Positions 8,314 to 39,695 of a stretch of DNA of 64,000 nucleotides are shown here, in pieces. Numbering within the stretch: position 1 is the first letter of the stretch; each line of letters opens with the position of its first letter. The stretch is from positions 310,001 through 374,000 of the forward strand of contig NW_025767250.1 in the NCBI RefSeq assembly GCF_003918875.1, read 5' to 3'. The notes below the pieces were generated by a model. It was not told where the DNA came from. It did not search any database and saw only the letters and a list, made by a program, of their open reading frames with translations. This DNA comes from Haliotis rubra (lineage: Eukaryota). The position numbers were made by a program, and so were the translations under genes.

Positions 8314-9164
8314 TGAGATGTTGATCAAGATCATTCCATAAATGTTTCATGAAGTTTAGATCTTGAGACCTTGAGACCCACGGCATTATGGATGTTGTGG
8401 TTCCTCAAAAAGGGCATTGCCCGTCTTGTGGTGTGAGGTTGGGCATTGTTGTGTTGAAAAATGATGTTCTGTTCAATAATGGGAGGGGTGGTGGGGTAGC
8501 CTAATGGTTAAAGCGTTGGCCCGTCACGCCGAAGACCCGGGTTCGAATCCCCACATGGGTACAATGTGTGAAGCCCATTTCTGGTGTCCCTCGCCGTGAT
8601 GTTGCTGGTATATTGCTAAAAGCGGCGTAAAACCAAACTCAGTCAGTCAGTCAGTCAATAATGGGAAGGACATTTAGCAGAGGAATTTCATCAGTGTAAT
8701 GTTGTGCCATTAAATGGTCCCGGATGTGTACCAAGTCTGTTGTGGCACATGGAGGCCCACATCATTACACTCTCTCCACGAAACCTGTCCACTTCTTTTA
8801 TACAGTTTTGATCATAATCTTCCCCATGACTTCTGTAAATAGGACATCTTTGGTCTGTCACTAAACCAAACACATCTCCTTCTGGACTGAAATCTTCCGA
8901 GTTGGCTGTGGTGAGGCGTTTCAGTAAGCCATCTTACCGCTAAGTCTATGTTAAAGTATGCGAGTTGCGATCACCTTAGCACTACAATCATTTTCTGTGT
9001 AGTCAACCAGATCTGGGTAGGTCATGTGTTGACCCAGGGGTCTGATAACAGTTCCATTGTATGTCAATGTTCCTTAGCAATATGTCTTAAAACCTGGCTA
9101 TGACTGAAACTGAGTTGCCTGTCTGTAGTCGGCTGATGGTGTTGCAGCATTGAGCTAGTCTTGG
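8314..9164 (-). pseudogene. Decayed Tc1-family (DD34E) transposase
   Basis: Frameshifted minus-strand translation gives ordered Tc1 motifs: PRLAQ..TISRLQTGNSVSVIARF; GSTHDLPRSG*; VWFSD; IYRSHGEDYDQNCIKEVDRFRGESVMMW; LMAQHYTDEI..NVLP; IFQHNNAQPH; MPWVSRSQDLNFMKHLWNDL. Confidence 0.88.
8485..8654 (+). mobile_element. tRNA(Asp)-derived SINE, family A, young copy nested in the Tc1 relic
   Basis: A and B boxes intact. GTCACGCCGAAGACCCGGGTTCGA resembles the tRNA-Asp(GTC) anticodon/T arm. (CAGT)n tail. Perfect 12-bp TSD TCAATAATGGGA at 8473-8484 and 8655-8666. Confidence 0.95.
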
Positions 9165-14450: not shown

Positions 14451-14570
14451 AAAATATGAAGACAATCTCCCATGTCAGGAGACATCCAGACAAGTGCACA
14501 ATGTCTTGCTGGAATTCTCTGTGGTTTTTGGCATACAGATTATCTGTAAGCATGAAAGGGAAGCTATGAT

Positions 14571-14780
14571 TACACAATGCCATTTAGAAAGTGGTCATAT
14601 GTAACATGTTATATTTGAGATCACACTTTCTCAGTAAAGTACAGATTCTAGTACTTTTGTTGGGTTGAGTCCCATCCGGGATTCGAACCCACACCCTCAG
14701 AGTCAGGCGACCCATGGCGATTAGGTGCCTGACTCTGAGAGGATGGGTTCGAATCTGGATGGGACTCAAGTATAATCCCA
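14571..14780. mobile_element. Palindromic tRNA-like element (internally deleted copy) carrying one copy of the 24-bp monomer
   Basis: Inverted arms at 14665-14708 and 14727-14769, each with GGGTTCGAATC. The left terminus TACACAATGCCATTTAGAAAGT matches the reverse complement of 29219-29240. Monomer GTACAGATTCTAGTACTTTTGTTG at 14639-14662. Confidence 0.8.
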
Positions 14781-14789
14781 GAACTTGTG

Positions 14790-15396
14790 CAGGCCTACAA
14801 AAGAAAACTTTCCCACTGTGCAGAAAAACGCAGAAAAGCCCACATTAATTGTGGAAATAGCAACATAAACATAATACCTCGCTGCTGAAACAGTAAAAAC
14901 GGCAACGAAAGACTATGAAACTGAAACATTTTTATGTCAGTGAACTTTGACCTCTACTGCACATGCGCGTTATGATCCGAGCTTCTTTAAAATTTCCCAG
15001 CAACCGTGAATCGTTCGTGCAGAAAAAGTATTGAATATGTCGAAATAATTGCTGTCAATCATTTCATTCGAATGGAAAGTATACTAAACAAGTGTGCACA
15101 CAAGTATGATGATGATAAATGCCAAATAACACAACAGAAATACTTTAAATAGGGAATGTAAGTCTTGTTCAAGCTGGAAAATGTCAACATGCTGTGGAGG
15201 CTTCCTCTTCCGTGTGCGCATGCGCAAAATCGAAGTTGCAGGCTCTTCGGTATTTTTTCTACAGTTTTAGTGATTTAAAGTGGCCGTTTTTACTGTTTCA
15301 GTAGCGAGGTATTATGTTTATGTTGCTATTTCCACGAGTAATGTGGACTTTTCAGCATTTTTCTGCACAGTGGGAAAGTTTTCTTTGGTAGGCTTG
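14790..15396. mobile_element. MITE with ~115-bp terminal inverted repeats (superfamily unassigned)
   Basis: CAGGCCTACAAAAGAAAACTTTCCCACTGTGCAGAAAAA...CAGTAAAAACGGC matches the reverse complement of 15280-15396 (CAAGCCTACCAAAGAAAACTTTCCCACTGTGCAGAAAAA...). No clear TSD. Confidence 0.9.
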
Positions 15397-17775: not shown

Positions 17776-18822
17776 CACTATAACAATGCTGATGGAACCT
17801 GGTGCTGTAGCTCACCTACACACAACAATGCTGACGGAACCTGGTGCTGTAGCTCACCTACACACAACAATGCTGATGGAACCCGGTGCTGTAGCTCACC
17901 TACACACAACAATGCTGATGGAACCTGGTGCTGTAGCTCACCTACACACAACAATGCTGACGGAACCTGGTGCTGTAGCTCACCTACACACAACAATGCT
18001 GATGGAACCTGGTGCTGTAGTTCACCTACACACAACAATGCTGATGGAACCCGGTGCTGTAGCTCACCTACACACAACAATGCTGATGGAACCTGGTGCT
18101 GTAGCTCACCTACACACAACAATGCTGATGGAACCTGGTGCTGTAGTTCACCTACACACAACAATGCTGATGGAACCTGGTGCTGTAGCTCACCTACACA
18201 CAACAATGCTGATGGAACCTGGTGCTGTAGCTCACCTACTAGGGGTGGGTATTGCAGAGAATTTTCATATTGCAATATATTGCGATGCGAAAGCATATAT
18301 TGCGCTATGTATTGCAATATATTGCAAGAGGTTCATGCTTGATTTATAAAGTAAGAAACACAACAAAATCACTATGCTTGATTAAGCTTTAATAAAAACT
18401 TTCAAATTACTTTACCATTGCATATTTTACGTACCGCGCTCCTCTTACCTATAGTTCCATCTACCGTGATCTTTTTCAACCCAAAATGCTGCCAATCTGA
18501 AGCTTTGCCCTAGTATTTGGCACCACAATAAATATTGTTCATTGTTGGGGGTCGAGATTTTACAACAAACGCATGACTTCCTGTGTGAAAATCAGAAATA
18601 TCCGAAGATTTCCGAGTGTTACGAAGTTTTCCGAATGCATGTCAAAATACCGGTTTTCGATCAACGTATTGCAATACGTATCGTTTTCATGTCTGAACCG
18701 ATATATACCAGTAAACCGGTTATATTGCGGAACCCTATCACCTACACACAACAATGCTGATGGAACATGGTGCTGTAGCTCACCTACACACAACAATGCT
18801 GATGGAACCTGGTGCTGTAGCC
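17776..18822. repeat. Minisatellite, 42-bp unit (ACAATGCTGATGGAACCTGGTGCTGTAGCTCACCTACACACA), ~13 copies, interrupted
   Basis: Period 42 (AACAATG at 17782 and 17824). About 11 copies precede and about 2 follow the hAT insertion. Confidence 0.97.
18240..18737. mobile_element. Non-autonomous hAT transposon, 498 bp
   Basis: Termini TAGGG...CCCTA. Perfect 8-bp TSD TCACCTAC (18232-18239 / 18738-18745). Subterminal ATTGCAATA/TATTGCG repeats at both ends. Confidence 0.9.
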
Positions 18823-20663
18823 ACCGGACTGACAACAACAAACTATAACAGTCTTATTACACTTGAATTACATTCCTATTACACTGGTATATGTTATTGT
18901 AACATTTGATACCTTTCCTTTGTCATTACGGTTGAACTGAGGGCTACTTGTGTTCAGCTTATCAAAATGTTGACGTCTATTTCCGGAGGAAGTAAGTTTG
19001 TTTGTCAGAGATAAAATATCAGCTGGTCAGGGAGGATGTAATCAAACTTTATTATTTTACAATTAGCTTCTTTTATTACAGATGTATGCATTTTTAGAGA
19101 TATTTCTGATATAAGTAAATACCACCAACTGTACAACAGTACCATGACTGATGTCAGAACAATCCACCACGACTGTTTAATTTACATGATGGCTGAGCTG
19201 TCATTGACCTTAGATTTCAGTTGGTGGAGTCGTGACTCTTCACCGTTGTCTGGGCTATTTCTGAGCCATGGGAAGAACTGTAGACATAATATACATCTCA
19301 TACCTGTTCTCCATTCAAGCTGTAATCCAATTTTCACCCAAATCTGAGGTAGGGCAAAGAACATGGAATTGGTTTCAGTCCAGGCCCATGGTTAATTAAC
19401 AGCTACACGCATCTATTCAAACATAGGTCCTGGCCATGTTTGCTTGATCACTTAACTGCTGTGGTGAACTGAATTAATGAAGCTGGGTAACTGAAGCCAC
19501 AGACAGACATTTACACTGTAAATATGGCAGTATTGTCACAAGTTTGCAGTTTTATTTTCCAAGTTCTTATTAGATAATGGCTGGTTGGAGTATTCTGATG
19601 GTGTCTCAAGTTCATGATGTTCTTCAACATTGTTTTCAGTGGTGAACTGGAATATCACATATCCAACCCACATCTTTGACCATGACTTCAGAGGCAACAG
19701 AACACCCAGGAATCTCAGATAACTGTATTAGTCCTGAAATAGATTTGTATCATATGTGCAGGACTCAAGTATCACTGTTTTTTGGCTGGAATTACAAAAG
19801 AAACAGGAACGGCGTAATTTAGTTGTTCTTCAGTGTCACAGGTTTATGGATTTGTATTATGAGGTAGTAATATGATGTGTATAATCTTCCTCTAAATTAT
19901 GTGCTGGTATCCCAGCAACACATATATATGTTCTTGACTTGTGGCTAAATGGTACCCTGATGTGAGGAGACACTAAGTGTTGGATAACCACATGTGGCAT
20001 ACTGGTTGAAGAAGGTGAAGAAACTGTCATGCTTCTCTGGAGATCCTGTTGGCACCAAGCTCTGCAGATCATAAGTTAAAAACAGCATATGTCCTGCCTG
20101 TAATTGTTGGCTTTTGATGTTTGAAGAAATGTTTGATTTCAAATTTAAGAAATGAATCTTGTTCTTTGACAAAACTTCCAGAACACTTTATGAGTGACAT
20201 TGGAGCAATGTCACATCAAGTGCAACACAAGGAGTAAAAGAAGAAAATGAAATCATAAAGCAATCATGTATTTATCATGCTGTTCTGCGCAAGATCATTT
20301 CTGTTAACATTGCCTTTATAAATAAATCTATAAATAATCTATATCTTTTATTAGATAACATCTAATAAATCATTTACAAATTAGATTTTTGTTGGTTTAA
20401 GCAGCTATGTATACATCTGTCTCTCTGTATCTGGGAATTGTTTTATAAACTGACAACTGTCATAATTAGGTTTTCTACCAACATATGACTCTGTGTTCTG
20501 GCACTGATACTATGGTTTTCCTACTGAAGAGTCTCTAATTAAACAATGTTTTGCTGTGTATGACAATGCCAATAATTCCCCTAATCATATTGTCTCAAAC
20601 CCGTTTCTCTCAGCATCATGATATGCATGTGTTCCCGGAAATTGAAGCTTTTCTTTACAGAAA

Positions 20664-23363: not shown

Positions 23364-25297
23364 TGTGAATGATTCTCCAGAAGAAAAAAATTATGCTACT
23401 GAAATTTTTAAATTTTTTAAGTGGCAACTGTCTGCTGTCTCCTAACGTTCTTCCTATATTTTTGTGGCAGTCTATACACTGTAACTTGTAATTCTGCTAT
23501 AATGTGAAACCTGTTAGTCAGACCCACTATACAAGTGCATGATTGAAATGTTACCACTTCAGCCAGATCCTTGAAGTAGACGCAGATGTTTTCATCCACT
23601 CTGTTCAAGCCACATGAAGCACAAATGGTTACAATGTAAAGAAATACTCATGTAAAAAGTAGGTTTCACTTTAAGAAAGTTTAATATCCTTAAGTAGAGG
23701 GGGAATTTCCCCCAGAACATGATACAAAGACACTGAAATGTCCATTTCATTGTTAATTCAGTGAGGTTCCCCTACATCATGTTCAGACCCATTTCTAGTG
23801 AAATCCATCACACTGGCTATATTAGATTGACAAATGTGAAATCTAATTTTCACAGCATAATTCAATGCTGGGGAGCAAAAACCCTTCACCACCACGTTGC
23901 ATGGGATCTTATTTCTAGTTCCAGCTCTCCGCTAAATGGACTGCTTGTATGCATGGCAATGGCTTCCTAAAAGCCGCCCTGAAAGAGCTCTTCATTGCCA
24001 AGCACATGAAGAAGGTAAAAAGAGAAAGATGTTGTACATCAGAGACATTTGCTGTTGCTACTGGCAAAGTTACGTTAGCTCATCGACCACTCATTTAACA
24101 GGAGATTGATCTGAGGTCTGAATTTTCATCGGGGAAATCAATTTGTCTTGCAACGTGGGGAATATGGTCTATGTGCCTTAAGAAACAAACTAAATGGTCC
24201 ATTTGATCCTGAGCGCTAAACACAGCCTTTACCAATTTGCACACCTAACACTCTTAGTTTATACTTTCAGTGCTTTTTATCAATGGAAGTTTTCTGCTGG
24301 ATATAACTGAAAGATCCCACTTGTATCCCCTGATAAATTTGATGGTTGCTTCCTATTTATGTGATTTTACCTCTTTTTTCAATTTACTTTGAGAAATAAC
24401 TGCAGCAGATGTGAAAATGAAATATAAATTGATCGTTTATATAGGTGTCAGGTTTTACTTATTTCTAGTTTGTGATATTTTTGTTTAGAATAAATCGTCT
24501 TCACACCATCGACGCTCAAGATATATGACCAGTCTGAAGTTAAAATATGGATTTTAAAAAATTGAAAATGTATAGTTTTATTGCTTTAGGTGGTAACCTT
24601 TGACCTTCAATATAATGTTGTAATCTAAGTTTGCTGCCTGTTGGATTTCTGTGTTGGATGTATCCCCCAGAATGTATGGTTGTTGTAAGAACTGGCAACA
24701 GTGTGGATATAAATCAGGAGTCAATATGTGACTTGGTTAACTACAGGTTGGGACATTGCTCATACTGTTAGCGTCTAGGTCATGTGTCTCAGACCTCAAT
24801 ATCTGGAGGCTGCCAGGAGCTTTTTGTGATGTCGCTCAAACAACATTCATCCCTCACTCATGGTAAAGCTGTCAGTGTAAAAAGCCTCGGACGGCATGGT
24901 GTAGCTCTGACACATCATCCTACAAGAGAATGCTTTTATTTATATTTTATCACACATGTCCATCTGGTAGTGAAGCATCATTAACTGTGTGTCACTGCAC
25001 ATGTTAGACATTGGTTTGCCTGGTTCGATCTGACCGACAGCCTGCCGTGGTGGTGGATTATTGGCTGCTGCAGCACTGACCTGAAAATACAACCCACAAC
25101 TAACACTGTAAAGATAGACTTTGACATTTACGCTTACAACTTAGACAATATGCTGAGCAGAGTTAATTATTTTTAATGATCCATCAATTAAAAATACTTA
25201 AAGATCAGTTAAAACCAAGTATAACAATGCAGGACCTGATCACGTCAACACTGAGATGCTTTACATATGTCAGTGTGGGATCATGCTTTCTCATTAA

Positions 25298-28200
25298 GTA
25301 CAGATTCTAGTAGTTTTGTTGGTACAGATTCTAGTAGTTTTGTTGGTACAGATTCTAGTAGTTTTGTAGTGATGGGGTAGCCTAATGGTTAAAGCGTTTC
25401 GTTGCGAAGACCCGGTTTTGGGTACAATGGTACATTTCTGGTGTCCCCAGTATGTTGCTGGAATTTGCTAAAAGTGGTATAAACAGATTCAGTCAGTAGT
25501 TTTGTTGGTACAGATTCTAGTAGTTTTGTTGGTACAGATTCCAGTAGTTTTGTTGGTACAGATTCCAGTAGTTTTGTTGGTACTGATTCTAGTAGTTTTG
25601 TTGGTACAGATTCTAGTAGTTTTGTTGGTACAGATTCCAGTAGTTTTGTTGGTACTGATTCCAGTAGTTTTGTTGGTACTGATTCTAGTAGTTTTGTTGG
25701 AACAGATTCTAGTAGTCTTGCTGGTACTGATTCTAGTAGTTTTGCTGGTACTGATTCCAGTAGTTTTGTTGGAACAGATTCCAGTAGTTTTGTTGGTATT
25801 GATTCCAGTAGTTTTGCTGGTACTGATTCTAGTAGTTTTGCTGGTACAGCTTCTAGTAGTTTTGCTGGTACTGATTCCAGTAGTTTTGTTGGTACTGATT
25901 CCAGTAGTTTTGTTGGTACTGATTCTAGTAGTTTTGCTGGTACTGATTCTAGTAGTTTTGTTGGTACTGATTCCAGTAGTTTTTGTTGGTACAGATTCTA
26001 GTAGTTTTGCTGGTACTGATTCCAGTAGTTTTGTTGGTACTGATTCTAGTAGTTTTGCTGGTACTGATTCTAGTAGTTTTGCTGGTACTGATTGTAGTAG
26101 TTTTGCTGGTACTGATTCCAGTAGTTTTGTTGGTACTGATTCTAGTAGTTTTGTTGGTACTGAATCCAGTAGTTTTGTTGGTACAGGTTCTAGTAGTTTT
26201 GTTGGTACAGATTCTAGTAGTTTTGTTGGTACTGATTCTAGTAGTTTTGTTGGTACTGATTCTAGTAGTTTTGTTGGTACAGATTCTAGTAGTTTTGTTG
26301 GTACAGGTTCTAGTAGTTTTGTTGGTACTGATTCTAGTAGTTTTGTTGGTACAGGTTCTAGTAGTTTTGTTGGTACTGATTCCAGTAGTTTTGTTGGTAC
26401 TGATTCTAGTAGTTTTGTTGGTACAGGTTCTAGTAGTTTTGTTGGTACAGGTTCTAGTAGTTTTGTTGGTACTGATTCTAGTAGTTTTGTTGGTACTGAT
26501 TCTAGTAGTTTTGTTGGTACAGATTCTAGTAGTTTTGTTGGTACATATTCCAGTAGTTTTGTTGGTACAGATTCTAGTAGTTTTTCTTGGTACAGGTTCC
26601 AGTAGTTTTGTTGGTACTGATTCCAGTAGTTTTCTTGGTACAGGTTCTAGTAGTTTTGTTGGTACAGGTTCTAGTAGTTTTGTTGGTACCTGATTCCAGT
26701 AATTTTCTTGGTACAGGTTCTAGTAGTTTTTTCTTGGTACAGGTTCTAGTAGTTTTGTTGGTACAGGTTCTAGTAGTTTTGTTGGTACAGGTTCTAGTAG
26801 TTTTGTTGGTACTGATTCTAGTAGTTTTGTTGGTACAGGTTCTAGTAGTTTTGTTGGTACTGATTCTAGTAGTTTTGTTGGTACTGATTCTAGTAGTTTT
26901 GTTGGTACAGATTCTAGTAGTTTTGTTGGTACAGGTTCTAGTAGTTTTGTTGGTACAGATTCCAGTAGTTTTGTTGGTACAGGTTCTAGTAGTTTTGTTG
27001 GTACAGATTCTAGTAGTTTTGTTGGTACAGGTTCTAGTAGTTTTGTTGGTACTGATTCTAGTAGTTTTGTTGGTACTGATTCTAGTAGTTTTGTTGGTAC
27101 TGATTCTAGTAGTTTTGTTGGTACTGATTCTAGTAGTTTTGTTGGTACAGGTTCTAGTAGTTTTGTTGGTACTGATTCCAGTAGTTTTGTTGGTAAAGGT
27201 TCTAGTAGTTTTGTTGGTACAGATTCTAGTAGTTTTGTTGGTACAGATTCTAGTAGTTTTGTTGGTACTGATTCCAGTAGTTTTGTTGGTACAGATTCTA
27301 GTAGTTTTGTTGGTACAGATTCTAGTAGTTTTGTTGGTACAGGTTCTAGTAGTTTTGTTGGTACTGATTCCAGTAGTTTTGTTGGTACAGGTTCTAGTAG
27401 TTTTGTTGGTACTGATTCTAGTAGTTTTGTTGGTACAGGTTCTAGTAGTTTTGTTGGTACAGATTCCAGTAGTTTTGTTGGTACAGATTCTAGTAGTTTT
27501 GTTTGTACAGATTCCAGTAGTTTTGTTGGTACAGATTCTAGTAGTTTTGTTGGTACAGGTTCTAGTAGTTTTGTTGGTACAGATTCTAGTAGTTTTGTTG
27601 GTACAGGTTCTAGTAGTTTTGTTGGTACAGGTTCTAGTAGTTTTGTTGGTACTGATTCCAGTAGTTTTGTTGGTACAGGTTCCAGTAGTTTTGTTGGTAC
27701 AGATTCTAGTAGTTTTGTTGGTACAGATTCTAGTAGTTTTGTTGGTACTGATTCCAGTAGTTTTGTTGGTACAGGTTCTAGTAGTTTTGTTGGTACTGAT
27801 TCCAGTAGTTTTGTTGGTACAGATTCTAGTAGTTTTGTTGGTACATATTCTAGTAGTTTTGTTGGTACAGATTCCAGTAGTTTTGTTGGTACAGGTTCTA
27901 GTAGTTTTGTTGGTACAGATTCCAGTAGTTTTGTTGGTACAGGTTCTAGTAGTTTTGTTGGTACAGATTCTAGTAGTTTTGTTGGTACTGATTCTAGTAG
28001 TTTTGTTGGTACTGATTCTAGTAGTTTTGTTGGTACAGATTCCAGTAGTTTTGTTGGTACAGGTTCTAGTAGTTTTCTTGGTACAGGTTCTAGTAGTAGT
28101 TTTGTTGGTACTGATTCCAGTAGTTTTGTTGGTACTGATTCCAGTAGTTTTGTTGGTACAGATTCTAGTAGTTTTGTTGGTACTGATTCCAGTAGTTTTG

Positions 28201-28893
28201 TTGGTACAGGTTCTAGTAGTTTTCTTGGTACAGGTTCTAGTAGTTTTGTTGGTACTGATTCCAGAAGTTTTGTTGGTACTGATTTGGTAGTTTTGCTGGT
28301 ACTGATTCTAGTAGTTTTGTTGGTACTGATTCTAGTAGTTTTGTTGGTACAGGTTCTAGTAGTTTTGTTGGTACAGATTCTAGTAGTTTTGTTTGGTACT
28401 GGGTTCCAGTAGTTTTGTTGGTACAGATTCTAGTAGTTTTGTTGGTACAGATTCTAGTAGTTTTGTTGGTACAGATTCCAGTAGTTTTGTTGGTACAGAT
28501 TCTAGTAGTTTTGTTGGTACAGATTCTAGTAGTTTTGTTGGTACAGATTCCAGTAGTTTTGTTGGTACAGGTTCTAGTAGTTTTGTTGGTAAAGGTTCTA
28601 GTAGTTTTGTTGGTACAGATTCTAGTAGTTTTGTTGGTACAGGTTCTAGTAGTTTTGTTGGTACAGATTCTAGTAGTTTTGTTGGTACAGATTCTAGTAG
28701 TTTTGTTGGTTGATTCCAGTAATTTTGTTGGTACAGGTTCTAGTAGTTTTTTGGTGTTCTAGTAGTTTTGTTGGTACAGATTCTAGTAGTTTTGTTGGTA
28801 CAGATTCAAGTAGTTTTGTTGATACAGATTCTTGTTGTTTTGTTGGTACAGATTCTTGTAGTTTTGTTGGTACAGGTTCTAGTAGTTTTGTTG
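25298..28893. repeat. Minisatellite, 24-bp unit GTACAGATTCTAGTAGTTTTGTTG, ~145 copies
   Basis: Direct periodicity; variants ACTGATT, ACAGGTT and TTCCAG. Confidence 0.98.
25369..25496 (+). mobile_element. Family A SINE, scrambled with the host 24-bp repeat
   Basis: Ordered fragments GGGGTAGCCTAATGGTTAAAGCGTT, CGAAGACCCGG, TGGGTACAATG, CATTTCTGGTGTCCCC, ATGTTGCTGGAA, TTGCTAAAAG, TCAGTCAGT. Confidence 0.85.
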
Positions 28894-29475
28894 GGTTGAG
28901 TCCCATCCAGAAATCAAACCCACACTTTCAGAGTAAGGCAAGTAATCACCAGCCCACAAAGTCTGCGATCTTCCCCACTGAGCCACTGCAGCTAGTACAA
29001 AAATGGAAGTCTGGCAACTTGTAGTCTAGATCACGTTCTTACTGCACACCACTGATAAATGTAGACTGGCACAGCTCCGTGGCTGAAGCTATGAATAAAC
29101 AATGTCTTCACTGTGCTGGCGATTCAAATCCCGGATGGGACTCAACTAAAAAAATCACTAAAATCTGTGCCTCACTGAGAAAGTGTAATCCCAAATATAG
29201 GCTATGTTACATTCAACTACTTTCTAAAAGGCACTGTGTAGCCTAGGTGTTTCTCAAGAAATCATTTAACTAATTCACTATCATGACTGAAACACATTAA
29301 CAAGATAAAAACGTAGACCTGTTCAGTCTATTGGATTCAGTCATTAGCATATTCCTTTAACAATAAGACAGCATTCACCAGGGTCAGCTCCACAGAGAAT
29401 GTCATTTCTCAATCTGTCGTGAAGGAAAAAACTCTTTTGAATCTCTGCTGCTTCAAATAACAGCATACAAGAAAA

Positions 29476-31105
29476 TGTGTAGGAGTGCTTCATCTGTAGA
29501 TGTGTAATGTCAATAGAAGTGCTTCATCTGTATGTGTAATGTCAATAGAAGTTTTCATCTGTAGGTGTGTAATGTCAATAACAGTACTTCATCTGTAGGT
29601 GTGTATTGTCAATATGAGTGCTTCATCTGTGGGTGTAATGTCAATAATGTCAAGGTGTGTAATGTCAAGTGAGCTTCATTTGTAGGTGTGTAATGCCAGT
29701 AGCGTTAGTGCATGCCAAGACCGGGTTCGAATCCCCTGTGGCACAATGTGTAAAAGCCATTTCTGGTGTCCCCTTCATTGATGTTGCTGGAATATTGCTA
29801 AAAGCTGGCGTAACAGTCAGTCAGTCATCTGTAGGTGTGTAATGTCAATAGAAGTGCTTCAACTGTAGGTGTGTAATGTCAATATGAGTGCTTCATCTGT
29901 AGGTGTGTAATGTCAATACGAGTGCTTCATCTGTGGGTGTTTAATGTCAATAAGAGTGTTTCATCTGTAGGTGTGTAATGTCAAGGAGTGCTTCATCTGT
30001 AGGTATGTAATGTCAATAGCAGTGCTTCATCTGTGGGTGTGTAATGTCAATATGAGTGCTTCATCTGTGGGTGTGTAATGTCAATATGAGTGCTTCATCT
30101 GTAGGTGTGTAATGTCAATAGAAGTGCTTCATCTGTAGGTGTGTAATGTCAATAGAAGTGCTTCAACTGTAGGTCTGTAATGTCAATATGAGTGCTTCAT
30201 CTGTAGGTGTGTAATGTCAATAGAATTGCTTCATCTGTAGGTGTGTAATGTCAATAGGATTGCTTCATCTGTAGGTTTGTAATGTCAATAGAAGTGCTTC
30301 ATCTGTAGGTGTGTATGTAATGTCAATAACAGTGCTTCATCTGTGGGTGTGTAATGTCAAGTAGGAGTACTTCATCTGTAGGTGTGTATTGTCAATATGA
30401 GTGCTTCATCTGTGGGTGTGTAATGTCAATATGAGTGCTTCATCTGTGGGTGTGTAATGTCAACATGAGTGCTTCATCTGTGGGTGTGTAATGTCAATAG
30501 AAGTGCTTCATCTGTGGGTGTGTAATGTCAGTAGGATTGCTTCATCTGTAGGTGTGTAATGTCAATATGAGTGCTTCATCTGTGGGTGTGTAATGTCAAT
30601 ATGAGTGCTTCATCTGTGGGTGTGTAATGTCAATAGAAGTGCTTCATCTGTGGGTGTGTAATGTCAGTAGGATTGCTTCATCTGTGGGTGTGTAATGTCA
30701 ATAACAGTGCTTCATCTGTGGGTGTGTAATGTCAATAACAGTGCTTCATCTGTGGGTGTGTAATGTCAATAGAAGTGCTTCATCTGTGGGTGTGTAATGT
30801 CAGTAGGATTGCTTCATCTGTGGGTGTGTAATGTCAATAACAGTGCTTCATCTGTGGGTGTGTAATGTCAATCAGTGCTTCATAATGTCAATAGAAGTGC
30901 TTCATCTGTAGATGTGTAATGTCAACAGAAGTGCTTCATCTGTAGATGTCAATAATGTCAGTGGGTGTGATGTCAATTGCTTCATCTGTAGATGTGTAAT
31001 GTCAGTGCTTCATCTGTAGGAGTGTCATCTTCATCTGTAGGATGTGTAATGTCAGAAGTGCTTCAAGATGTGGATAGGAGTTCTTCATCTGTAGGTGTGT
31101 AATCA
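29476..31105. repeat. Minisatellite, 34-bp unit (GTGCTTCATCTGT[A/G]GGTGTGTAATGTCAATAGAA), ~44 copies
   Basis: Period 34 (TCATCT at 30061 and 30095). Confidence 0.96.
29691..29826 (+). mobile_element. Family A SINE, scrambled with the host 34-bp repeat
   Basis: AGACCGGGTTCGAATCCCC, ACAATGTGT, CCATTTCTGGTGTCCCC, TGATGTTGCTGGAATATTGCTAAAAGC, (CAGT)3. Confidence 0.85.
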
Positions 31106-31762: not shown

Positions 31763-32789
31763 TGCTTGTTGATGTAGTTGTTCTGGACAACAACTGCTGT
31801 ATTGCTTGTCACAATATTTAATGGCTTCTTCTTGAACCTCACTTATCTGGACACTTGCATTTTCTCAAATATTGTCCAGATAGAGAAATTTCCAGATATC
31901 TGAATCTTGTCATTTAACTTCTTTGAATGCAAAAGAATCTGTACAATATGTTAATGCTAAAGATTTTTCAAGTGTTTTTAAGTGACTGCATTAGTTGACG
32001 TCATACAAACATAGTTATCAGCTCTAAAGTATAACTCACTTTTGTGCCATGTTTGATTCTAGGAATACACTGCAGTTTTTCTTTCTTTTGCATTTAAATT
32101 TGCCAATTAACTATTGCTTGAGCGTCAGATTATCCAGAATAAGTTAAATTTAGAAGAGTTCCTTATGGTAACATATTCATACTATTGAAAAATATGGAGT
32201 GATTTGCTTCTTTTGTACATGTGTATCTTATCCTTCACTGGAAGCCATGAAAGTTTACTCAGATGTAACATTCTTAAACTGTTTTCAGAGAGATAGCTCC
32301 AGTTTTAAGTTTGAAATCTTCATCCCAGCTCCAAAATGCTAAAGTCCATGCTATTTTTAGTTAATAGTTAATAATGGCCTAATCTTCCTCCCCTGTCACT
32401 TCCAACACTTTCAAGGAGGCGATGGGTTCATCCTGAAGTGTGGAAATTTACACAAAACAGCAATACCAGCATCAAGTACTGTACTCTCCTAAGGGAGTTG
32501 AGAAGAATGATTGGTTTCTAAATGCAGATGAGGCTCTGGTAATTTCACCTTATAAATGAGCATGCAGTTAATTCTCAACTTGAATTTATTTTGTGCTTCC
32601 TGTGTGATGTAAATTGACTGGATCTGATCCATATAAGCACCGAAACACATAGCCAGGGGTACAGAAGGCATGGGCGTGTGGGAGGTGCAAGTGATAAAAG
32701 TCCAGTACGTCTTACTTGAGATCCAGGAAGTCATGTAGCAGACCCAGCTAGTAATATATGAGATACAATAGATCTTACAGATCTTGTAG

Positions 32790-35700
32790 GTTGTACATCA
32801 GACCCAGTTGGTCATACATCAGACCCAGTTGGTCATACAGCAGATGTAGTTGGTCATGTAGCAGATCTAGTTGGTTATACAGCAGACCCAGTTGGTCATA
32901 CAGCAGATCCAGTTGGTCATACAGCAGATCTAGTTGGTCATACAGCGGATCCAGTTGGTCATGCATCAGACCCAGTTGGTCATACAGCAGACCCAGTTGG
33001 TCATACAGCGGATCTAGTTGGTCATACAGCAGACCCAGTTGGTCACACAGCAGACCCAGCTGGTCATACAGCAGATCTAGTTGGTCATACAGCAGATCCA
33101 GTTGGTCATACAGCAGACCCAGTTGGTCATACAGCAGATCTAGTTGGTCATACAGCAGATCTAGTTGGATCTAGTTGGTCATACAGCAGATCCAGTTGGT
33201 CATGCAGCAGATCCAGTTGGTCATACAGCAGATCTAGTTGGTCATACAGCAGATCTAGTTGGTCATACAGCAGACCCAGTTGGTCATACAGCAGATCTAG
33301 TTGGTCATGTAGCAGATCAAGTTGGTCATGCAGCAGACCCAGTTGGTCATGCAGCAGATCTAGTTGGTCATGCAGCAGATCTAGTTGGTCATGCAGCAGA
33401 TCTAGTTGGTCATGCAGCAGATCTAGTTGGTCATGCAGCAGATCTAGTTGGTCATGCAGCAGATCTAGTTAGTCATGCATCAGATCTAGTTGGTCATGCA
33501 GCAGATCTAGTTGGTCATACAGCAGATCTAGTTGGTCATGCAGCAGATCCTAGTTGGTCATGCAGCAGATCCAGTTGGTCATAGCAGCAGATCTAGTTGG
33601 TCATGCAGCAGATCTAGTTGGTCATGCAGCAGATCCAGTTGGTCATGCAGCAGATCTAGTTGGTCATGCAGCAGATCTGGTTGGTCATGCAGCAGATCTA
33701 GTTGGTCATGTAGCAGATCCAGTTGGTCATGCAGCAGATCTAGTTGGTCATGCAGCATCAGTTGGTCATGCTTGAGTTGGTCATGCAGCAGATCTAGTTG
33801 GTCATGTAGCAGATCTAGTTGGTCATGTAGCAGATCTAGTTGGTCATGCAGCAGATCCAGTTGGTCAGCAGACAGCAGATGCAGCAGCAGTCATGCAGCA
33901 GATCTAGTTGGTCATGCAGCAGATCTAGTTGGTCATGCAGCAGATCTAGTTGGTCATGCAGCAGATCTAGTTGGTCATGCATCAGATCTAGTTGGTCATG
34001 CAGCAGATCTAGTTGGTCATGCAGCAGATCTAGTTGGTCATGCAGCAGATCTAGTTGGTCATGTAGCAGACCCAGTTGGTCATGCAGCAGATCTAGTTGG
34101 TCATGCATCAGATGTAGTTGGTCATGCAGCAGGTGTAGTTGGTCATGCATCAGATGTAGTGGGTCATGCATCAGATCTAGTTGGTCATGCAGCAGATCTA
34201 GTTAGTCATGCATCAGCTGCAGATCTAGTTGGTCATGCATCAGATCTAGTTGGTCATGCATCAGATCTAGTTGGTCATACAGCAGATCTAGTTGGTCATG
34301 CATCAGACCCAGTTGGTCATGCATCAGACCCAGTTGGTCATGCAGCAGATCTAGTTGGTCATGCAGCAGATCTAGTTGGTCATGCAGCAGATCTAGTTGG
34401 TCATGCATCAGATCTAGTTGGTCATGCATCAGATCTAGTTGGTCATGCATCAGATCTAGTTAGTCATGCATCAGGTCTAGTTGGTCATGCATCAGATGTA
34501 GTGGGTCATGCATCAGATCTAGTTGGTCATGCATCAGATCTAGTTGGTCATGCATCAGATGTAGTTAGTCATGCATCAGGTCTAGTTGGTCATGCATCAG
34601 ATGTAGTGGGTCATGCATCAGATCTAGTTGGTCATGCAGCAGGTCTAGTTGGTCATGCATCAGATCTAGTTGGTCATGCATCAGATGTAGTTGGTCATGC
34701 ATCAGATCTAGTTGGTCATGCATCAGATGTAGTTGGTCATGCATCAGGTCTAGTTGGTCATGCATCAGATGTAGTTGGTCATGCATCAGATCTAGTTGGT
34801 CATGCATCAGATGTAGTTAGTCATGCATCAGGTCTAGTTGGTCATGCATCAGATGTAGTGGGTCATGCATCAGATCTAGTTGGTCATGCATCAGGTCTAG
34901 TTGGTCATGCATCAGATGTAGTTGGTCATTGCAGCAGATCTAGTTGGTCATTCAGCAGATCTAGTTGGTCATGCATCAGATGTAGTGGGTCATGCATCAG
35001 ATCTAGTTGGTCATGCATCAGATGTAGTTGGTCATGCATCAGATCTAGTTGGTCATTCAGCAGATCTAGTTGGTCATTCAGCAGGTCTAGTTGGTCATGC
35101 ATCAGATGTAGTGGGTCATGCATCAGATCTAGTTAGGTCATGCATCAGATGTAGTTAGTCATGCATCAGGTCTAGTTGGTCATGCATCAGATGTAGTGGG
35201 TCATGCATCAGATCTAGTTGGTCATTCAGCAGATCTAGTTGGTCATTCAGCAGGTCTAGTTGGTCATGCATCAGATGTAGTGGGTCATGCATCAGATCTA
35301 GTTGGTCATGCATCAGATGTAGTTAGTCATGCATCAGGTCTAGTTGGTCATGCATCAGATGTAGTGGGTCATGCATCAGATCTAGTTGGTCATTCAGCAG
35401 TCTAGTTGGTCATGCATCAGATGTAGTGGGTCATGCATCAGATCTAGTAAATCATGCATCAGATGTAGTTAGTCATGCATCAGGTCTAGTTAGTCATTCA
35501 GCAGATCTAGTTGGTCATTCAGCAGGTCTAGTTGGTCATGCATCAGATGTAGTGGGTCATGCATCAGGTCTAGTTAGTCATGCATCAGGTGTAGTTGGTC
35601 ATGCATCAGATGTAGTGGGTCATGCATCAGATCTAGTTAGTCATGCATCAGGTGTAGTTGGTCATGCATCAGATGTAGTTGGTCATGCATCAGATCTAGT

Positions 35701-37433
35701 ACATCATGCATCAGATGTAGTTGGTCATGCATCAGGTGTAGTGGGTCATGCATCAGATGTAGTTGGTCATGCATCAGATCTAGTACATCATGCATCAGAT
35801 GTAGTTAGTCATGCATCAGGTCTAGTTGGTCATGCATCAGATGTAGTGGGTCATGCATCAGATCTAGTTGGTCATACATCAGGTCTAGTACATCATGCAT
35901 CAGATGTAGTTAGTCATGCATCAGGTCTAGTTAGTCATTCAGCAGATGTAGTGGGTCATGCAGCAGATCTAGTTGGTCATGCATCAGATGTAGTTAGTCA
36001 TGCATCAGATGTAGTTGGTCATTCAGCAGATTTAGTTGGTCATGCATCAGATCTAGTGGGTCATGCATCAGGTGTAGTGGGTCATGCATCAGATGTAGTT
36101 GGTCATGCATCAGATCTAGTACATCATGCATCAGATGTAGTTAGTCATGCATCAGGTCTAGTTGGTCATGCATCAGATGTAGTGGGTCATGCAGCAGATC
36201 TAGTTGGTCATGCATCAGATCTAGTTGGTCATGCATCAGATCTAGTTGGTCATTCAGCAGATCTAGTTGGTCATTCAGCAGGTCTAGTTGGTCATGCATC
36301 AGATGTAGTGGGTCATGCATCAGGTCTAGTTAGTCATGCATCAGGTGTAGTTGGTCATGCATCAGATGTAGTGGGTCATGCATCAGATCTAGTTAGTCAT
36401 GCATCAGGTCTAGTTGGTCATGCATCAGATGTAGTTGGTCATGCATCAGATCTAGTTGGTCATGCATCAGATGTAGTGGGTCATGCATCAGGTGTAGTGG
36501 GTCATGCATCAGATGTAGTTGGTCATGCATCAGATCTAGTACATCATGCATCAGATGTAGTTAGTCATGCATCAGGTCTAGTTGGTCATGCATCAGATGT
36601 AGTGGGTCATGCAGCAGATCTAGTTGGTCATGCATCAGGTCTAGTACATCATGCATCAGATGTAGTTAGTCATGCATCAGGTCTAGTTAGTCATGCAGCA
36701 GATGTAGTGGGTCATGCAGCAGATCTAGTACATCATGCATCAGATGTAGTTAGTCATGCATCAGATGTAGTTGGTCATTCAGCAGATTTAGTTGGTCATG
36801 CATCAGATGTAGTGGGTCATGCATCAGATGTAGTTGGTCATGCATCAGGTCTAGTTGGTCATGCATCAGATGTAGTGGGTCATGCATCAGATCTAGTTGG
36901 TCATGCATCAGATGTAGTGGGTCATGCATCAGATGTAGTTGGTCATGCATCAGATCTAGTACATCATGCATCAGATGTAGTTAGTCATGCATCAGGTCTA
37001 GTTGGTCATGCATCAGATGTAGTGGGTCATGCATCAGATCTAGTACATCATGCATCAGATGTAGTTAGTCATGCATCAGGTCTAGTTGGTCATGCATCAG
37101 ATGTAGTGGGTCATGCATCAGATCTAGTTGGTCATTCAGCAGATCTAGTTGGTCATTCAGCAGATCTAGTTGGTCATTCAGCAGGTCTAGTTGGTCATGC
37201 ATCAGATGTAGTGGGTCATGCATCAGATGTAGTTGGTCATGCATCAGATGTAGTTGGTCATGCATCAGATCTAGTACATCATGCATCAGATGTAGTTGGT
37301 CATGCATCAGATCTAGTACATCATGCATCAGATGTAGTTAGTCATGCATCAGATCTAGTACATCATGCATCAGATGTAGTTGGTCAAACAAGAAATCCAT
37401 TAGGTCATACATCATAAGAGCCAGTTGGTCATA
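32790..37433. repeat. Minisatellite, 21-bp unit (CAGATCTAGTTGGTCATGCA[G/T]), ~220 copies
   Basis: Direct periodicity; 7-aa repeats in the ORF track; variant domains and a 756-bp higher-order duplication. Confidence 0.98.
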
Positions 37434-39695
37434 CAAAAGTTTAAGTAAGTTAAACTTGAGATTCAGAATGTCTGTTTGGAGATCCAGGTGATGCAAAAGA
37501 TTTACAGTATTTAATTGTAAAATATGACTGAAATGTAATTAACTGAGCGTCTTCATTCATTAACTCAACAAACACACTGATAATTAATTATTTAAAGTGA
37601 ACTGAAGTAATTAAGTAACTAATTTGAAAGAATCAGGTGTTGTTTGACATTTTACCAATTACACTTGCCAAGATGTCACGGTCCCAAGATACTACTTAGC
37701 ATGGATTGTTTTATATTATATATAATTATATCTCTTGTCTCAAACTGTGGATAACTCTACTATTTATGATTTTTCGTTGGGCCTCACACACAGCACTTTC
37801 AATTTAACTCTGGTGGTTTCAACGATTGCATTCCTTGTGCTCTATCGGGGGAATTCGTGTGCAATCGGAGTGCACAAGCAGTTTCCTCGGTAGGGTGGAT
37901 GCCCCGTGACTGTCGTGAGAAATTTTATTAACAATTGAAATCTGCAAGGTAAGTTATGTAAAAAACAAACATTCATCAATATTATTTACCCGAGATCGTC
38001 AATACCAAAATCAATTGCCTATATAACCAAAAAATAGCAAGCGAAAATTCAGTAAGATCAGTTGTCTGCTAGTGACAGGCCATATATAAATAGGAAGCCA
38101 TGTGATCACAACACTCCTTTGCTGTACAGAGAGAAAAGTATGGTTCATCGTCGAAAAAACTTACAAAATCCGTTGGATGTGCACGCGGAGAGCGGCAACA
38201 GTTTTGCTGATACGATGTCATCAGCGCTATTTTTGTAGGAAACACTTGATATTTTTGTGTGAAATAGATGAATATATCATTTATCACACAAGGTTAGTAA
38301 ATGCACAATTTAAATGAAATTAAAGATGAAAATTAAGTTTTTGTCTTTTATCATCGAAAACCCATGACACCGAGATATACTCTCTAAAAACACAAGGGGC
38401 TCACACAAAAAGATATCCTATGATCTATCATCAGAGAACAGAACAGCAGAAAAATGACTGCCTGAGACAGTTTGGGGGACCTATATCCCCACACAGCTGA
38501 AACTTAACATGTGAACCTTACCATTCCTTCATGCACCAGAGTGGCAACGTTCCTGTGTTTGACAGTTCAGTAAAAGATCGTCTAATTGTTCTGAGCCAGT
38601 AGTATTGTTGATATTCATAATCCAATGTAACCAGATCTCTTCTCTTCCTTATTGCTGCATAAGTGGTCACATCTGAAACGTGTCATCTGTGCCATGATTG
38701 AATGCAAAGGGTTTTCAAGCCACTGTTCATTTTATTAGGCCACCAAGATCAAAGTACTCACCAGAAAATTAGAAGTATTCACATGCAAATCACAAAGTCT
38801 TGGGATGTTATTGGGCAGAGTCAAGCCAGGAATTTGACTCTTCATGCTGGTCACATATTGCCCTTGAAGACAATAAAGCTCCTGTCCACTTGCGTATATC
38901 ATTACTTTCTTATTTCTTCTGCAAATCATCACCCAGAATCAATGGCAGCCATGAGTCCTGACCTTTCCTCCCGAGTGTTTTCAGGACATGATCAGGAGAG
39001 ATTAGTGTCAACATGCAATGGGACAATCACTGCTTAAGGAGTGAGTGAGTGAGTTAAGATTTTAAGTCACATCGGCAGTATTTCGGCCACATCGTGACCT
39101 CTGCAAAGGAGAGGACAAGACTCTCTAAAACATTGGACAATGGTTACCTGTTATTGATGAAGTCAAACTCTCATTTTCCACCATGCGCCTCTGTCTTAGT
39201 TTCTGATTGTTGCACCACCAACTGTGCTGTTGATTGTCATGTTACACCTTAGTTTTTCTATCCATTTGTTCTCTGAAGTCTGTAATCATCTGAAATCATT
39301 TTAATATGTATTCATTGTATATGATAATGACAAATGTATTTGATGATGACAGATGTCGCAATGTAACATCAGTCAACTTTTCAAATGTCTTCTGTTCTTT
39401 ATGTCTTGTACATCAGTTTCCATGTTAGAGGTCATGTTACTCCCTTTGATGAGAAATCTTCAGTGAGAGTTGAGCAGGAGAAGAATTTTCATGGGTGCTG
39501 TTATGGATAAGAAAGTTTGTGTGTCATGGTGAAATATGTCTGTAAACATCTTTGACAGGACTGAAGAAATATAATAGCATGGAGATGTCAAGCTACACAG
39601 GAAATTAGTATTTCCGTGCCTCCAATTAAGATAATGTCTTGAACTTTCCCAACGACAGTGTCAAAAGCAAACATGAACCATGAAAGCACAGTCTA

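What the first reader, a model, noticed from the sequence alone, without database searches (positions are those of the whole stretch)
25276..29240. A 3.6-kb minisatellite born from a single 24-mer inside a mobile-element arm, with the unexpanded state present 11 kb away
Seen: at 14616-14677 the sequence reads TGAGATCACACTTTCTCAGTAAA-[GTACAGATTCTAGTACTTTTGTTG]x1-GGTTGAGTCCCATCC. At 25276-28908 it reads TGGGATCATGCTTTCTCATTAA-[GTACAGATTCTAGTAGTTTTGTTG]x~145-GGTTGAGTCCCATCC. The opposite arm of the same element (~29120-29240, inverted) also keeps a single diverged monomer. Inference: the array expanded in situ, in one arm only, so the ancestral monomer, both breakpoints and an internal control are all visible. 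The family could be a genome-wide seed for VNTRs.
Basis: partly seen in the sequence, partly recalled or inferred. Interest (0 to 1): 0.75.

Follow-up and report, generated by a model that had tools for sequence, protein, structure and literature searches.

The report
Minisatellite grown from one SINE segment
A 3.6-kb run of about 144 copies of a 24-base motif grew in place from a single copy of that motif inside an old copy of a very common short repeat; this is a clean but ordinary case of a jumping-element fragment becoming a minisatellite, and it has happened nowhere else in this genome assembly.

Summary
About 144 tandem 24-mers (25298-28894) sit exactly where a dispersed repeat family carries one copy of that 24-mer, and family sequence continues on both sides.

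The single-copy state is the family state. It occurs at 1,718 places in the 1.38-Gb assembly, whereas tandem dimers of the motif occur only at this locus. The expansion is therefore derived, happened in place, and is unique.

- **The "mobile element with two arms".** It is not a TIR transposon. It is a head-to-head pair of units of a ~297-bp SINE-like family with pol III A/B-box-like motifs. The family is dispersed, also forms 297-bp tandem arrays, and is often found as inverted pairs.
- **The opposite arm as a control.** It shares no clear derived changes with the expanded copy, so it is just another family copy.
- **A genome-wide VNTR seed.** None of the other copies has expanded.

The better predictor is the place. 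32.5% of this 64-kb window is minisatellite in 18 arrays, and the two neighbouring arrays I tested are also found only here.

A different SINE inserted into the array after it had formed. Short-read contigs from two sample codes show many copies of the array.

TE-derived minisatellites are well known, and this scan has already noted another SINE-to-minisatellite case elsewhere in this genome. Interest is low to moderate.

The parts
14563..14712 (-). Family copy 'A': positions 1-150 of the ~297-bp unit. The SINE-like reading direction is the minus strand. It carries the single unexpanded 24-mer at 14639-14662.
   Evidence: 93% identity to a reference unit taken from a tandem array (L016:1503-1799). 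Sequence read.
14715..14769 (+). Short inverted partial copy (unit positions 159-104) forming a foldback with copy A. It stops exactly where the 24-mer would begin.
25209..25297 (-). Outer (3'-side) part of the old family copy that hosts the array. Homology is confident from 25263 (unit position 42). Further left it is only a weak, much decayed match.
   Evidence: 79% identity to unit positions 42-102; alignments
25298..25367 (.). First 2.9 units of the 24-bp array, identical to each other.
   Evidence: TRF. A short-read contig bridges the left flank into two units at 25254-25348.
25368..25494 (+). Insertion of a different tRNA-derived SINE ('SINE-2'), which has a (CAGT)n tail and has lost internal sequence. 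It is flanked by a duplicated piece of the monomer of 6-11 nt (AGTAGTTTTGT). Removing it and one duplicate restores a perfect unit.
   Evidence: At least 613 first-look candidates in the genome, 72-79% identity. Alignment with five copies that have their own target-site duplications.
25495..28894 (.). Main body of the 24-bp array: 141 units plus a partial one. Position 16 is G in all 131 units of exactly 24 nt. Variants cluster by region.
28895..29087 (-). Rest of the host family copy (unit positions 103-297). It includes the B-box-like and A-box-like motifs and the ~95-bp upstream part.
   Evidence: 78% identity to unit positions 79-238. Positions 239-297 were read by eye against the unit.
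29088..29104 (-). First 17 nt of a following tandem unit, so the host was at least 1.06 units of a head-to-tail pair.
   Evidence: by eye against the junction between units seen
29113..29248 (+). Inverted, internally deleted family copy (unit positions ~168-9), the 'opposite arm'. Its single diverged monomer is at 29146-29170.
   Evidence: 83% identity to unit positions 9-126

Best explanation
An old copy of an abundant ~297-bp SINE-like repeat sits at this locus in head-to-head arrangement with a second copy. A 24-bp stretch of its body, lying just downstream of the tRNA-like part, was duplicated once. It was then amplified in place to about 144 tandem units by replication slippage and/or unequal exchange between units.

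The founding copy already carried a private C-to-G change at motif position 16. That change is fixed in the whole array. Later, a different SINE retroposed into the third unit, and the array went on turning over.

The array is most likely a neutral, non-coding minisatellite. Its birth owes more to the region, which is packed with arrays found nowhere else, than to any property of the repeat family.

**Shown:** the homology of unit and flanks, the break points, the uniqueness of the expansion, the single-copy family state, the SINE insertion, and the regional clustering of variants.

**Inferred:** the molecular mechanism (slippage or unequal exchange), neutrality, and the influence of the region.
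For: - **Array.** Real and strong.
- **Flanks.** Both continue the family unit without loss. Unit positions 42-102 lie to the left of the array and the unit continues from position 103 to its right; the aligned stretch, unit positions 79-238, also covers the last array unit.
- **Single-copy state.** The single-motif state with both flanks (45-mer, up to 2 mismatches) occurs 1,718 times (851 forward, 867 reverse). A reversed control pattern gives 0. All 30 best family copies carry the motif once per unit.
- **Uniqueness.** A genome-wide search for a 48-nt dimer (up to 3 mismatches) found 100 hits, all at this locus. The window itself holds exactly 100, with the same 7/27/50/16 split by mismatch count, so nothing lies elsewhere. 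A family-type junction 31-mer (up to 3 mismatches) gave 76 hits, all here. A junction pattern requiring a non-G at position 16 gave 0 hits.
- **Single founder.** Position 16 is G in 131 of 131 units, against C in the family.
- **Local growth.** Variants are clustered by region. Position-22 C occurs only in units 9-25, and position-7 G only from unit 29 onward.
- **SINE-2 insertion.** It carries a target-site duplication made of monomer sequence, so at least two units existed before it inserted.
- **Short-read support.** Contigs from two sample codes of one study bridge the left flank into tandem units. Summed word depth in the array is about 10-85 times that of the flank.
- **Region.** 32.5% of the window is minisatellite in 18 arrays, against 6.4% in 88 kb of other loci. 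The neighbouring 34-bp and 21-bp arrays are also found only here.
Against: - There is no 5-10-bp direct repeat flanking the progenitor motif, as the classical slippage-origin model expects. The microhomology is a single G.
- The array units show no significant single-strand structure, with z-scores of -0.4 to -0.9.
- Array length rests on a hybrid Nanopore/Illumina assembly whose reads had a 1-2-kb median length (PMC6774278), so the count of about 144 may be wrong.
- The runs found all come from one study, probably the assembly's own, so that support is not independent.
- The baseline for regional enrichment is a small sample biased toward loci that hold the repeat family.
- No orthologous locus from another individual or species could be examined.
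Confidence: 0.85

Rival explanations
1. Assembly artefact. The long-read assembler inflated or invented the array, and the true locus has one or a few units.
For: The assembly paper reports a Nanopore median read length of only 1-2 kb, shorter than the 3.6-kb array. No single listed contig spans the locus.
Against: Short-read contigs hold 3-4 tandem units, for example 96 nt at 25530-25625. One bridges the unique flank into two units. Summed word depth in the array is tens of times the flank depth in all three runs. Tandem dimers exist nowhere else in the assembly that could supply those words. The variant structure is regionally ordered, not noise-like.
Confidence: 0.05
2. The element itself drives the expansion. 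Either the head-to-head (palindromic) arrangement or the hairpin-forming context of the motif stalls replication and makes this family a recurrent seed of VNTRs.
For: In the unexpanded state the motif lies between two predicted hairpins: a 7-bp stem (AAAGTAC/GTACTTT) and the T-arm-like stem. The 101-nt stretch folds with z = -4.0. Inverted pairs are common in the family.
Against: 1,718 copies with the motif, many of them in inverted pairs, show no second expansion. The 11 copies carrying the stem-breaking G variant are all single-copy, 6 of them checked directly. The neighbouring arrays found only here have unrelated units.
Confidence: 0.07
3. The repeat is functional: either a coding octapeptide repeat (one frame is open and reads VQILVVLL) or a regulatory or RNA-producing array.
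For: ORFs of 115-567 codons run through the array on the + strand.
Against: A 24-nt unit with one stop-free frame gives such ORFs mechanically, and unit-length variants (20-27 nt) break the frame. There were no Pfam hits in nearby ORFs and no Rfam family in the window apart from one tRNA-like hit at 8496-8554. Expression was not tested.
Confidence: 0.03

Closest known systems
Minisatellites derived from SINEs: human Alu-derived minisatellites (Jurka & Gentles 2006) and the mouse VNTR family expanded from B1 (Bois et al. 1998), as summarised in the review PMC6947457
   Same: An internal short segment of a dispersed SINE is amplified in place into a tandem array. The rest of the element survives as flanks, and the family's single-copy state shows the direction of change.
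   Different: The Alu and B1 cases recur at many loci and are ascribed to short direct repeats inside the element. Here there is one locus out of at least 1,718 copies and only 1 nt of flanking microhomology.
Earlier finding of this scan, s1-349462 (same genome, other DNA): a 42-bp minisatellite grown from the head of a tRNA-derived SINE, said to recur at about two dozen places
   Same: Same genome and the same kind of SINE-to-minisatellite conversion, with the worn element still attached.
   Different: It involves a different SINE and a different segment (the head, not the body) and is reported as recurrent, whereas this one is unique. I did not re-test that note.
SINE-related or tRNA-related satellites (Hy/Pol III satellite of plethodontid salamanders, Xenopus satellite 1) and MITE-linked bivalve satellites such as BIV160 (Table 1 of PMC6947457). 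Possibly also the 290-291-bp SalI satellite of Haliotis (Muchmore 1998; Hernandez-Ibarra 2008; reference list of PMC5874043).
   Same: The host family itself forms head-to-tail arrays of whole ~297-bp units, for example about 19 units at contig C2605:499212-504816. This is like SINE-derived satellites.
   Different: That is amplification of the whole unit. The finding is amplification of a 24-bp sub-segment. Identity with the SalI satellite rests only on my memory of its unit length. The papers are not held and no sequence was compared. GTCGAC occurs in only 2 of the sampled units, while GTCGGAC is common.

Membership tests
TE-derived minisatellite | Tandem array of a 10-100-bp unit | tested here: met
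   24-bp unit, about 144 copies, 91% matches
TE-derived minisatellite | The unit is a contiguous segment of a dispersed repeat, and the element continues on both flanks | tested here: met
   Unit positions 42-102 lie to the left of the array and the unit continues from position 103 to its right; the aligned stretch, unit positions 79-238, also covers the last array unit
TE-derived minisatellite | The family's normal state is a single copy of the motif | tested here: met
   1,718 single-copy sites and no other tandem dimer
TE-derived minisatellite | Short (5-10 bp) direct repeats flanking the progenitor motif (Haber-Louis origin model; a feature of the mechanism, not of the class) | tested here: not met
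   Only 1 nt (G) is shared between the unit start and the right flank
VNTR (length-polymorphic minisatellite) | Different unit numbers among individuals | tested here: inconclusive
   Both sample codes show many copies of the array words, but contigs cannot size the array. One weak joint skipping 56 nt (25316 to 25373) hints at a variant in the left mini-array.
tRNA-derived SINE (host family) | Internal pol III A and B boxes / a tRNA-related head | tested here: inconclusive
   By eye, an A-box-like motif (TGGCTGAGCGG) and a perfect B box (GGTTCGAATCC) lie about 55 nt apart. The Rfam tRNA model does not match; only the T-arm matches, to the tmRNA model at E = 0.11. ARAGORN finds no tRNA.
tRNA-derived SINE (host family) | Target-site duplications and a fixed 3' end with variable 5' truncation | tested here: inconclusive
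   One of 6 isolated copies has a clear 12-bp duplication (L006). Copies share the end at unit position 1 and stop at positions 146-297. However, the sample was selected with a query covering positions 1-150.
tRNA-derived SINE (host family) | A-rich or simple-repeat 3' tail, and a partner LINE sharing the tail | tested here: not met
   Copies end in ...GTAATCATAGC with no simple-repeat tail. A partner LINE was not sought.
MITE / TIR DNA transposon (implied by 'arms') | Terminal inverted repeats at both ends in the family as a whole, with a fixed-length target duplication | tested here: not met
   Most copies are one-armed. Inverted pairs have variable inner junctions, for example 96/97, 150/159, 161/139, 173/143 and 207/75 in unit positions.
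Satellite DNA (host family) | Head-to-tail arrays of the whole unit | tested here: met
   297-bp periodicity in contigs C2605 (about 19 units), C2249, C2419, C36, C2146 and C2212

The most novel reading that the evidence does not exclude
The window lies in a domain that generates minisatellites, where unrelated local sequences, each found nowhere else, are amplified in place. There are 18 arrays covering 32.5% of 64 kb. On this reading the SINE-born array is the one case whose starting sequence is known, so it acts as a built-in tracer. It would show that the place (for example a recombination- or break-prone, perhaps subtelomeric, region) and not the sequence decides what becomes a minisatellite. 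SINE-2 insertions in two neighbouring arrays would give relative dates.
Probability: 0.35. Interest if true: 0.45.

Novelty: new member of a known kind. Interest (0 to 1): 0.25.

Why it matters
This is a tidy example of minisatellite birth. The progenitor motif, both break points (to within 1 nt), a founder-specific substitution, about 1,700 unexpanded controls and a later insertion that gives a relative date are all visible.

It also corrects a tempting generalisation. The repeat family is not a VNTR seed, and the region is the better predictor.

In practice the locus could serve as a hypervariable marker in abalone if it proves polymorphic. It adds no new mechanism.

Tried and rejected
- **TIR-transposon / MITE reading.** Rejected.
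- **tRNA gene or known RNA family in the arms.** No tRNA model match.
- **A subfamily carrying the array's G variant, as an immediate progenitor.** 11 G-type copies exist, but they are nearer the general unit (86-94% for five of the six checked) than to this locus's copy (79-85% for five of six). All are single-copy.
- **Right arm as a recent inverted duplicate of the left arm.** Only one shared derived site.
- **Higher-order repeat structure in the array.** None; there is only a weak dip at lag 6.
- **Hairpin-prone units.** Not significant.
- **Coding potential nearby.** No Pfam hits.
- **Telomeric repeats in the window.** None.
- **Naming the family from the literature.** The held paper on mollusc SINEs (PMC4758252) has no held supplement. 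A full-text search for diagnostic motifs returned only unrelated titles. The SalI-satellite papers are not held.
- **A genome-wide baseline of minisatellite density and the window's neighbours.** I used the 28 loci already held instead.
- **Identity of the organism.** Not given by any tool. I infer Haliotis rubra, assembly GCA_003918875, from assembly size. The paper gives 1,378,265,264 bp in 2,854 scaffolds at 40.52% GC. This genome is 1,378,282,171 bp in 2,855 contigs, and the window is 40% GC.
Full report
**Observation**

The window carries a 24-bp tandem array at 25298-25367 (2.9 copies, 100% matches) and 25495-28894 (141.6 copies, 91% matches, score 5471). Dynamic-programming segmentation gives 2 full units, 1 unit split by an insertion, and 141 more. 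Of these, 131 are exactly 24 nt long.

BLAST of 14560-14790 against the collapsed locus gives the following:
- left junction: 87% (41/47);
- last unit plus right flank: 87% (61/70);
- inverted right-hand copy, 119 nt: 82%.

The family reads AGTAAA-[24-mer]-GGTTGAGTCCC. The locus reads ATTAA-[24-mer]x144-GGTTGAGTCCC. The base after the array is G, the same as the first base of the unit, so the register is fixed to within 1 nt.

**What the 'element' is**

The 241-nt query around 14560-14800 found at least 2,843 first-look candidates in the window's own genome. The copies define a unit of about 297 bp. I used a real copy, L016:1503-1799, as the reference for unit positions.

Read on the strand opposite to the window's + strand, the unit has three parts:
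- about 95 nt of upstream sequence;
- a stretch with an A-box-like motif and a perfect B box about 55 nt apart;
- a body that holds the 24-mer just after the T-arm-like hairpin, ending in ...GTAATCATAGC.

The Rfam tRNA model does not match. Only the T-arm matches, weakly, and ARAGORN finds nothing. 'tRNA-derived' therefore rests on motifs alone.

Copies occur in three arrangements:
- singly, sharing the end at unit position 1 and stopping at variable positions (146-297); one of these, L006, has a clear 12-bp target-site duplication;
- as head-to-tail arrays of whole units, for example about 19 units on contig C2605;
- strikingly often as inverted pairs whose heads face each other, with variable inner junctions.

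This is a SINE-like repeat that also behaves as a satellite. It is not a TIR transposon.

At the finding's locus the host is made up as follows:
- one unit: positions ~42-102 left of the array, and positions 103-297 right of it;
- the first 17 nt of a next unit (29088-29104);
- an inverted, internally deleted copy (29113-29248).

The copy 11 kb away (14563-14712) is unit positions 1-150 followed by a short inverted piece. It is simply one of thousands. It is 93% identical to the reference unit, while the array's host is only 78-79% identical and therefore much older.

The two 'arms' at the locus share one derived site, against 27 and 37 private ones (a rough alignment). The right arm is not a duplicate of the left and is not a true internal control.

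**Direction and uniqueness of the change**

A 45-nt pattern spanning left flank, one motif and right flank (up to 2 mismatches) occurs 1,718 times (851 forward, 867 reverse). A reversed control pattern gives 0.

A 48-nt dimer (up to 3 mismatches) occurs 100 times in the genome, all at this locus. The window alone contains exactly 100, with the same split by mismatch count (7/27/50/16). One search shows that the tool's counts are whole even when its listing is cut at 100 rows. Nothing is therefore hidden.

A junction 31-mer in the family's own C-type spelling (up to 3 mismatches) gives 76 hits, all here. With a non-G required at position 16 it gives none.

The single-copy state is therefore ancestral and the expansion is unique in this assembly.

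**History inside the array**

- Position 16 is G in all 131 units of regular length, whereas the family has C. This indicates one founder copy that already carried the change.
- The G variant occurs in 11 other family copies. The six I fetched all carry the motif once. Five of them are closer to the general unit (86-94%) than to this locus (79-85%). The variant is therefore sporadic and does not by itself cause expansion.
- Four sites are polymorphic among units: position 5 (A/T), 7 (A/G), 11 (T/C) and 22 (T/C).
- These variants are ordered by region. Position-22 C occurs only in units 9-25, position-7 G only from unit 29 onward, and position-5 T mostly in units 4-42. Position-5 T and position-7 G never occur in the same unit.
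- Position-11 C is found on three backgrounds, which suggests recurrent mutation or exchange between units.
- There is no higher-order period.
- This pattern fits stepwise local duplication and exchange. It does not fit import of a ready-made array.

**The interruption**

25368-25494 is a copy of a different SINE with a clear A box, a B box and a (CAGT)n tail. It has at least 613 candidates in the genome, 72-79% identical to this copy, which has lost internal sequence. It is flanked by 6-11 nt of duplicated monomer sequence. Removing it and one duplicate restores a perfect unit. At least two units therefore existed when it inserted.

One oddity remains. The three units to its left are identical to each other and to the commonest unit type, although the insertion looks old. 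Conversion from the main array, or recent re-duplication, would explain this. I could not decide between them.

**Is it real DNA?**

The genome's size matches the published Haliotis rubra hybrid Nanopore/Illumina assembly to within 16,907 bp and one record. The match is an inference, and the difference would fit an added mitochondrial genome.

That paper reports Nanopore reads with a median length of 1-2 kb, so the unit count is uncertain.

Only three runs, from one study with two sample codes, hold the locus, and they are not independent of the assembly. Laid on 24300-25640, their short-read contigs show the following:
- one bridges the unique flank into two units (25254-25348);
- several hold three to four tandem units;
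- summed word depth in the array is about 10-85 times that of the flank in all three runs.

The tool warns that depth is not copy number. Tandem words exist nowhere else in the assembly, so a many-copy array in both samples is the simplest reading.

**Mechanism**

There is no 5-10-bp direct repeat at the ends of the progenitor motif, only one shared G. The first duplication therefore does not fit the classical flanking-repeat slippage model reviewed in PMC6947457.

In the unexpanded family state the motif lies between a 7-bp hairpin (AAAGTAC/GTACTTT) and the T-arm-like hairpin. That 101-nt stretch folds with z = -4.0, whereas array units have no significant structure. A stall-and-slip origin at these hairpins is possible. 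It is undercut by the roughly 1,700 copies with the same context that did not expand.

**The region**

The region looks more informative than the element.
- 32.5% of the window is minisatellite (periods 7-100 nt, at least 3 copies) in 18 arrays. The figure is 6.4% in 88 kb of other loci I held, which is a biased baseline.
- The neighbouring 34-bp unit is found only at this locus, even as a single copy. The tandem dimer of the 21-bp unit is also found only here.
- The 34-bp array also carries an insertion of the second SINE.

My reading is that a local tendency to amplify short segments acted on whatever sequence was there. In this one case the sequence happened to be a recognisable repeat. That last step is inference.

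**Function**

Nothing points to a function. The long ORFs through the array are the mechanical result of one stop-free frame in a 24-nt unit, and unit-length variants break that frame. Nearby ORFs have no Pfam match. Rfam finds only one tRNA-like hit elsewhere in the window. Expression was not tested.

**Comparison and verdict**

Minisatellites born from SINEs and other transposable elements are long known, for example from Alu, B1 and LTR elements (PMC6947457). This scan has already recorded another SINE-to-minisatellite case on other DNA of this genome (s1-349462; I did not re-test it).

This locus is a new and unusually clean member of a known kind. Interest is low to moderate.

Noticed in passing
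L002, L003, L005, L009, L014, L020, L025, L037, L039, L041; window 14563-14769; pairs (contigs C65, C157, C290, C591, C669): About a third of the sampled loci of the 297-bp family are inverted pairs, always with the tRNA-like heads facing inward and the fixed ends outward. The inner junctions vary. Some look like twin-priming-type 5' inversions (L002, L025). Others are long palindromic duplications (L003, L014, L037). The mechanism is unresolved.
   Followed up: partly
window 29699-29823: A second, 5'-truncated copy of the (CAGT)n-tailed SINE is inserted in the neighbouring 34-bp minisatellite. It is flanked by a duplicated piece of that array's unit of about 15-19 nt. Both arrays therefore predate activity of this SINE.
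   Followed up: partly
window 17782-18838: A 42-bp array (about 11 + 2.4 units; the unit contains GGTGCTGTAGCTCA, which is A-box-like) is split by a ~498-bp insert at 18240-18737. The insert starts TAGGGG, ends CCCTA and is flanked by TCACCTAC on both sides, like a hAT-type MITE with an 8-bp target duplication. The 42-bp unit may be the SINE-head minisatellite noted elsewhere in this genome (s1-349462). This was not tested.
   Followed up: no
window 1-64000: 18 separate minisatellite arrays cover 32.5% of the window. The largest are 43 bp x58 (756-3268), 21/42 bp x220 (32778-37435) and 58 bp x41+, which runs off the window end (61629-64000). The 34-bp unit and the 21-bp dimer are found nowhere else in the assembly.
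   Followed up: partly
window 25316-25373 (reads): One contig in each of runs X1 and X3 joins 25316 to 25373, skipping 56 nt, with only 21-22 nt on the shorter side. This may be an allele with fewer units left of the SINE insertion, or it may be a chimeric unitig.
   Followed up: no
window 8488-8651 and 255-418: Further copies of the (CAGT)n-tailed SINE. The one at 8496-8554 is the window's only Rfam tRNA hit (29.2 bits, right at the gathering threshold).
   Followed up: no
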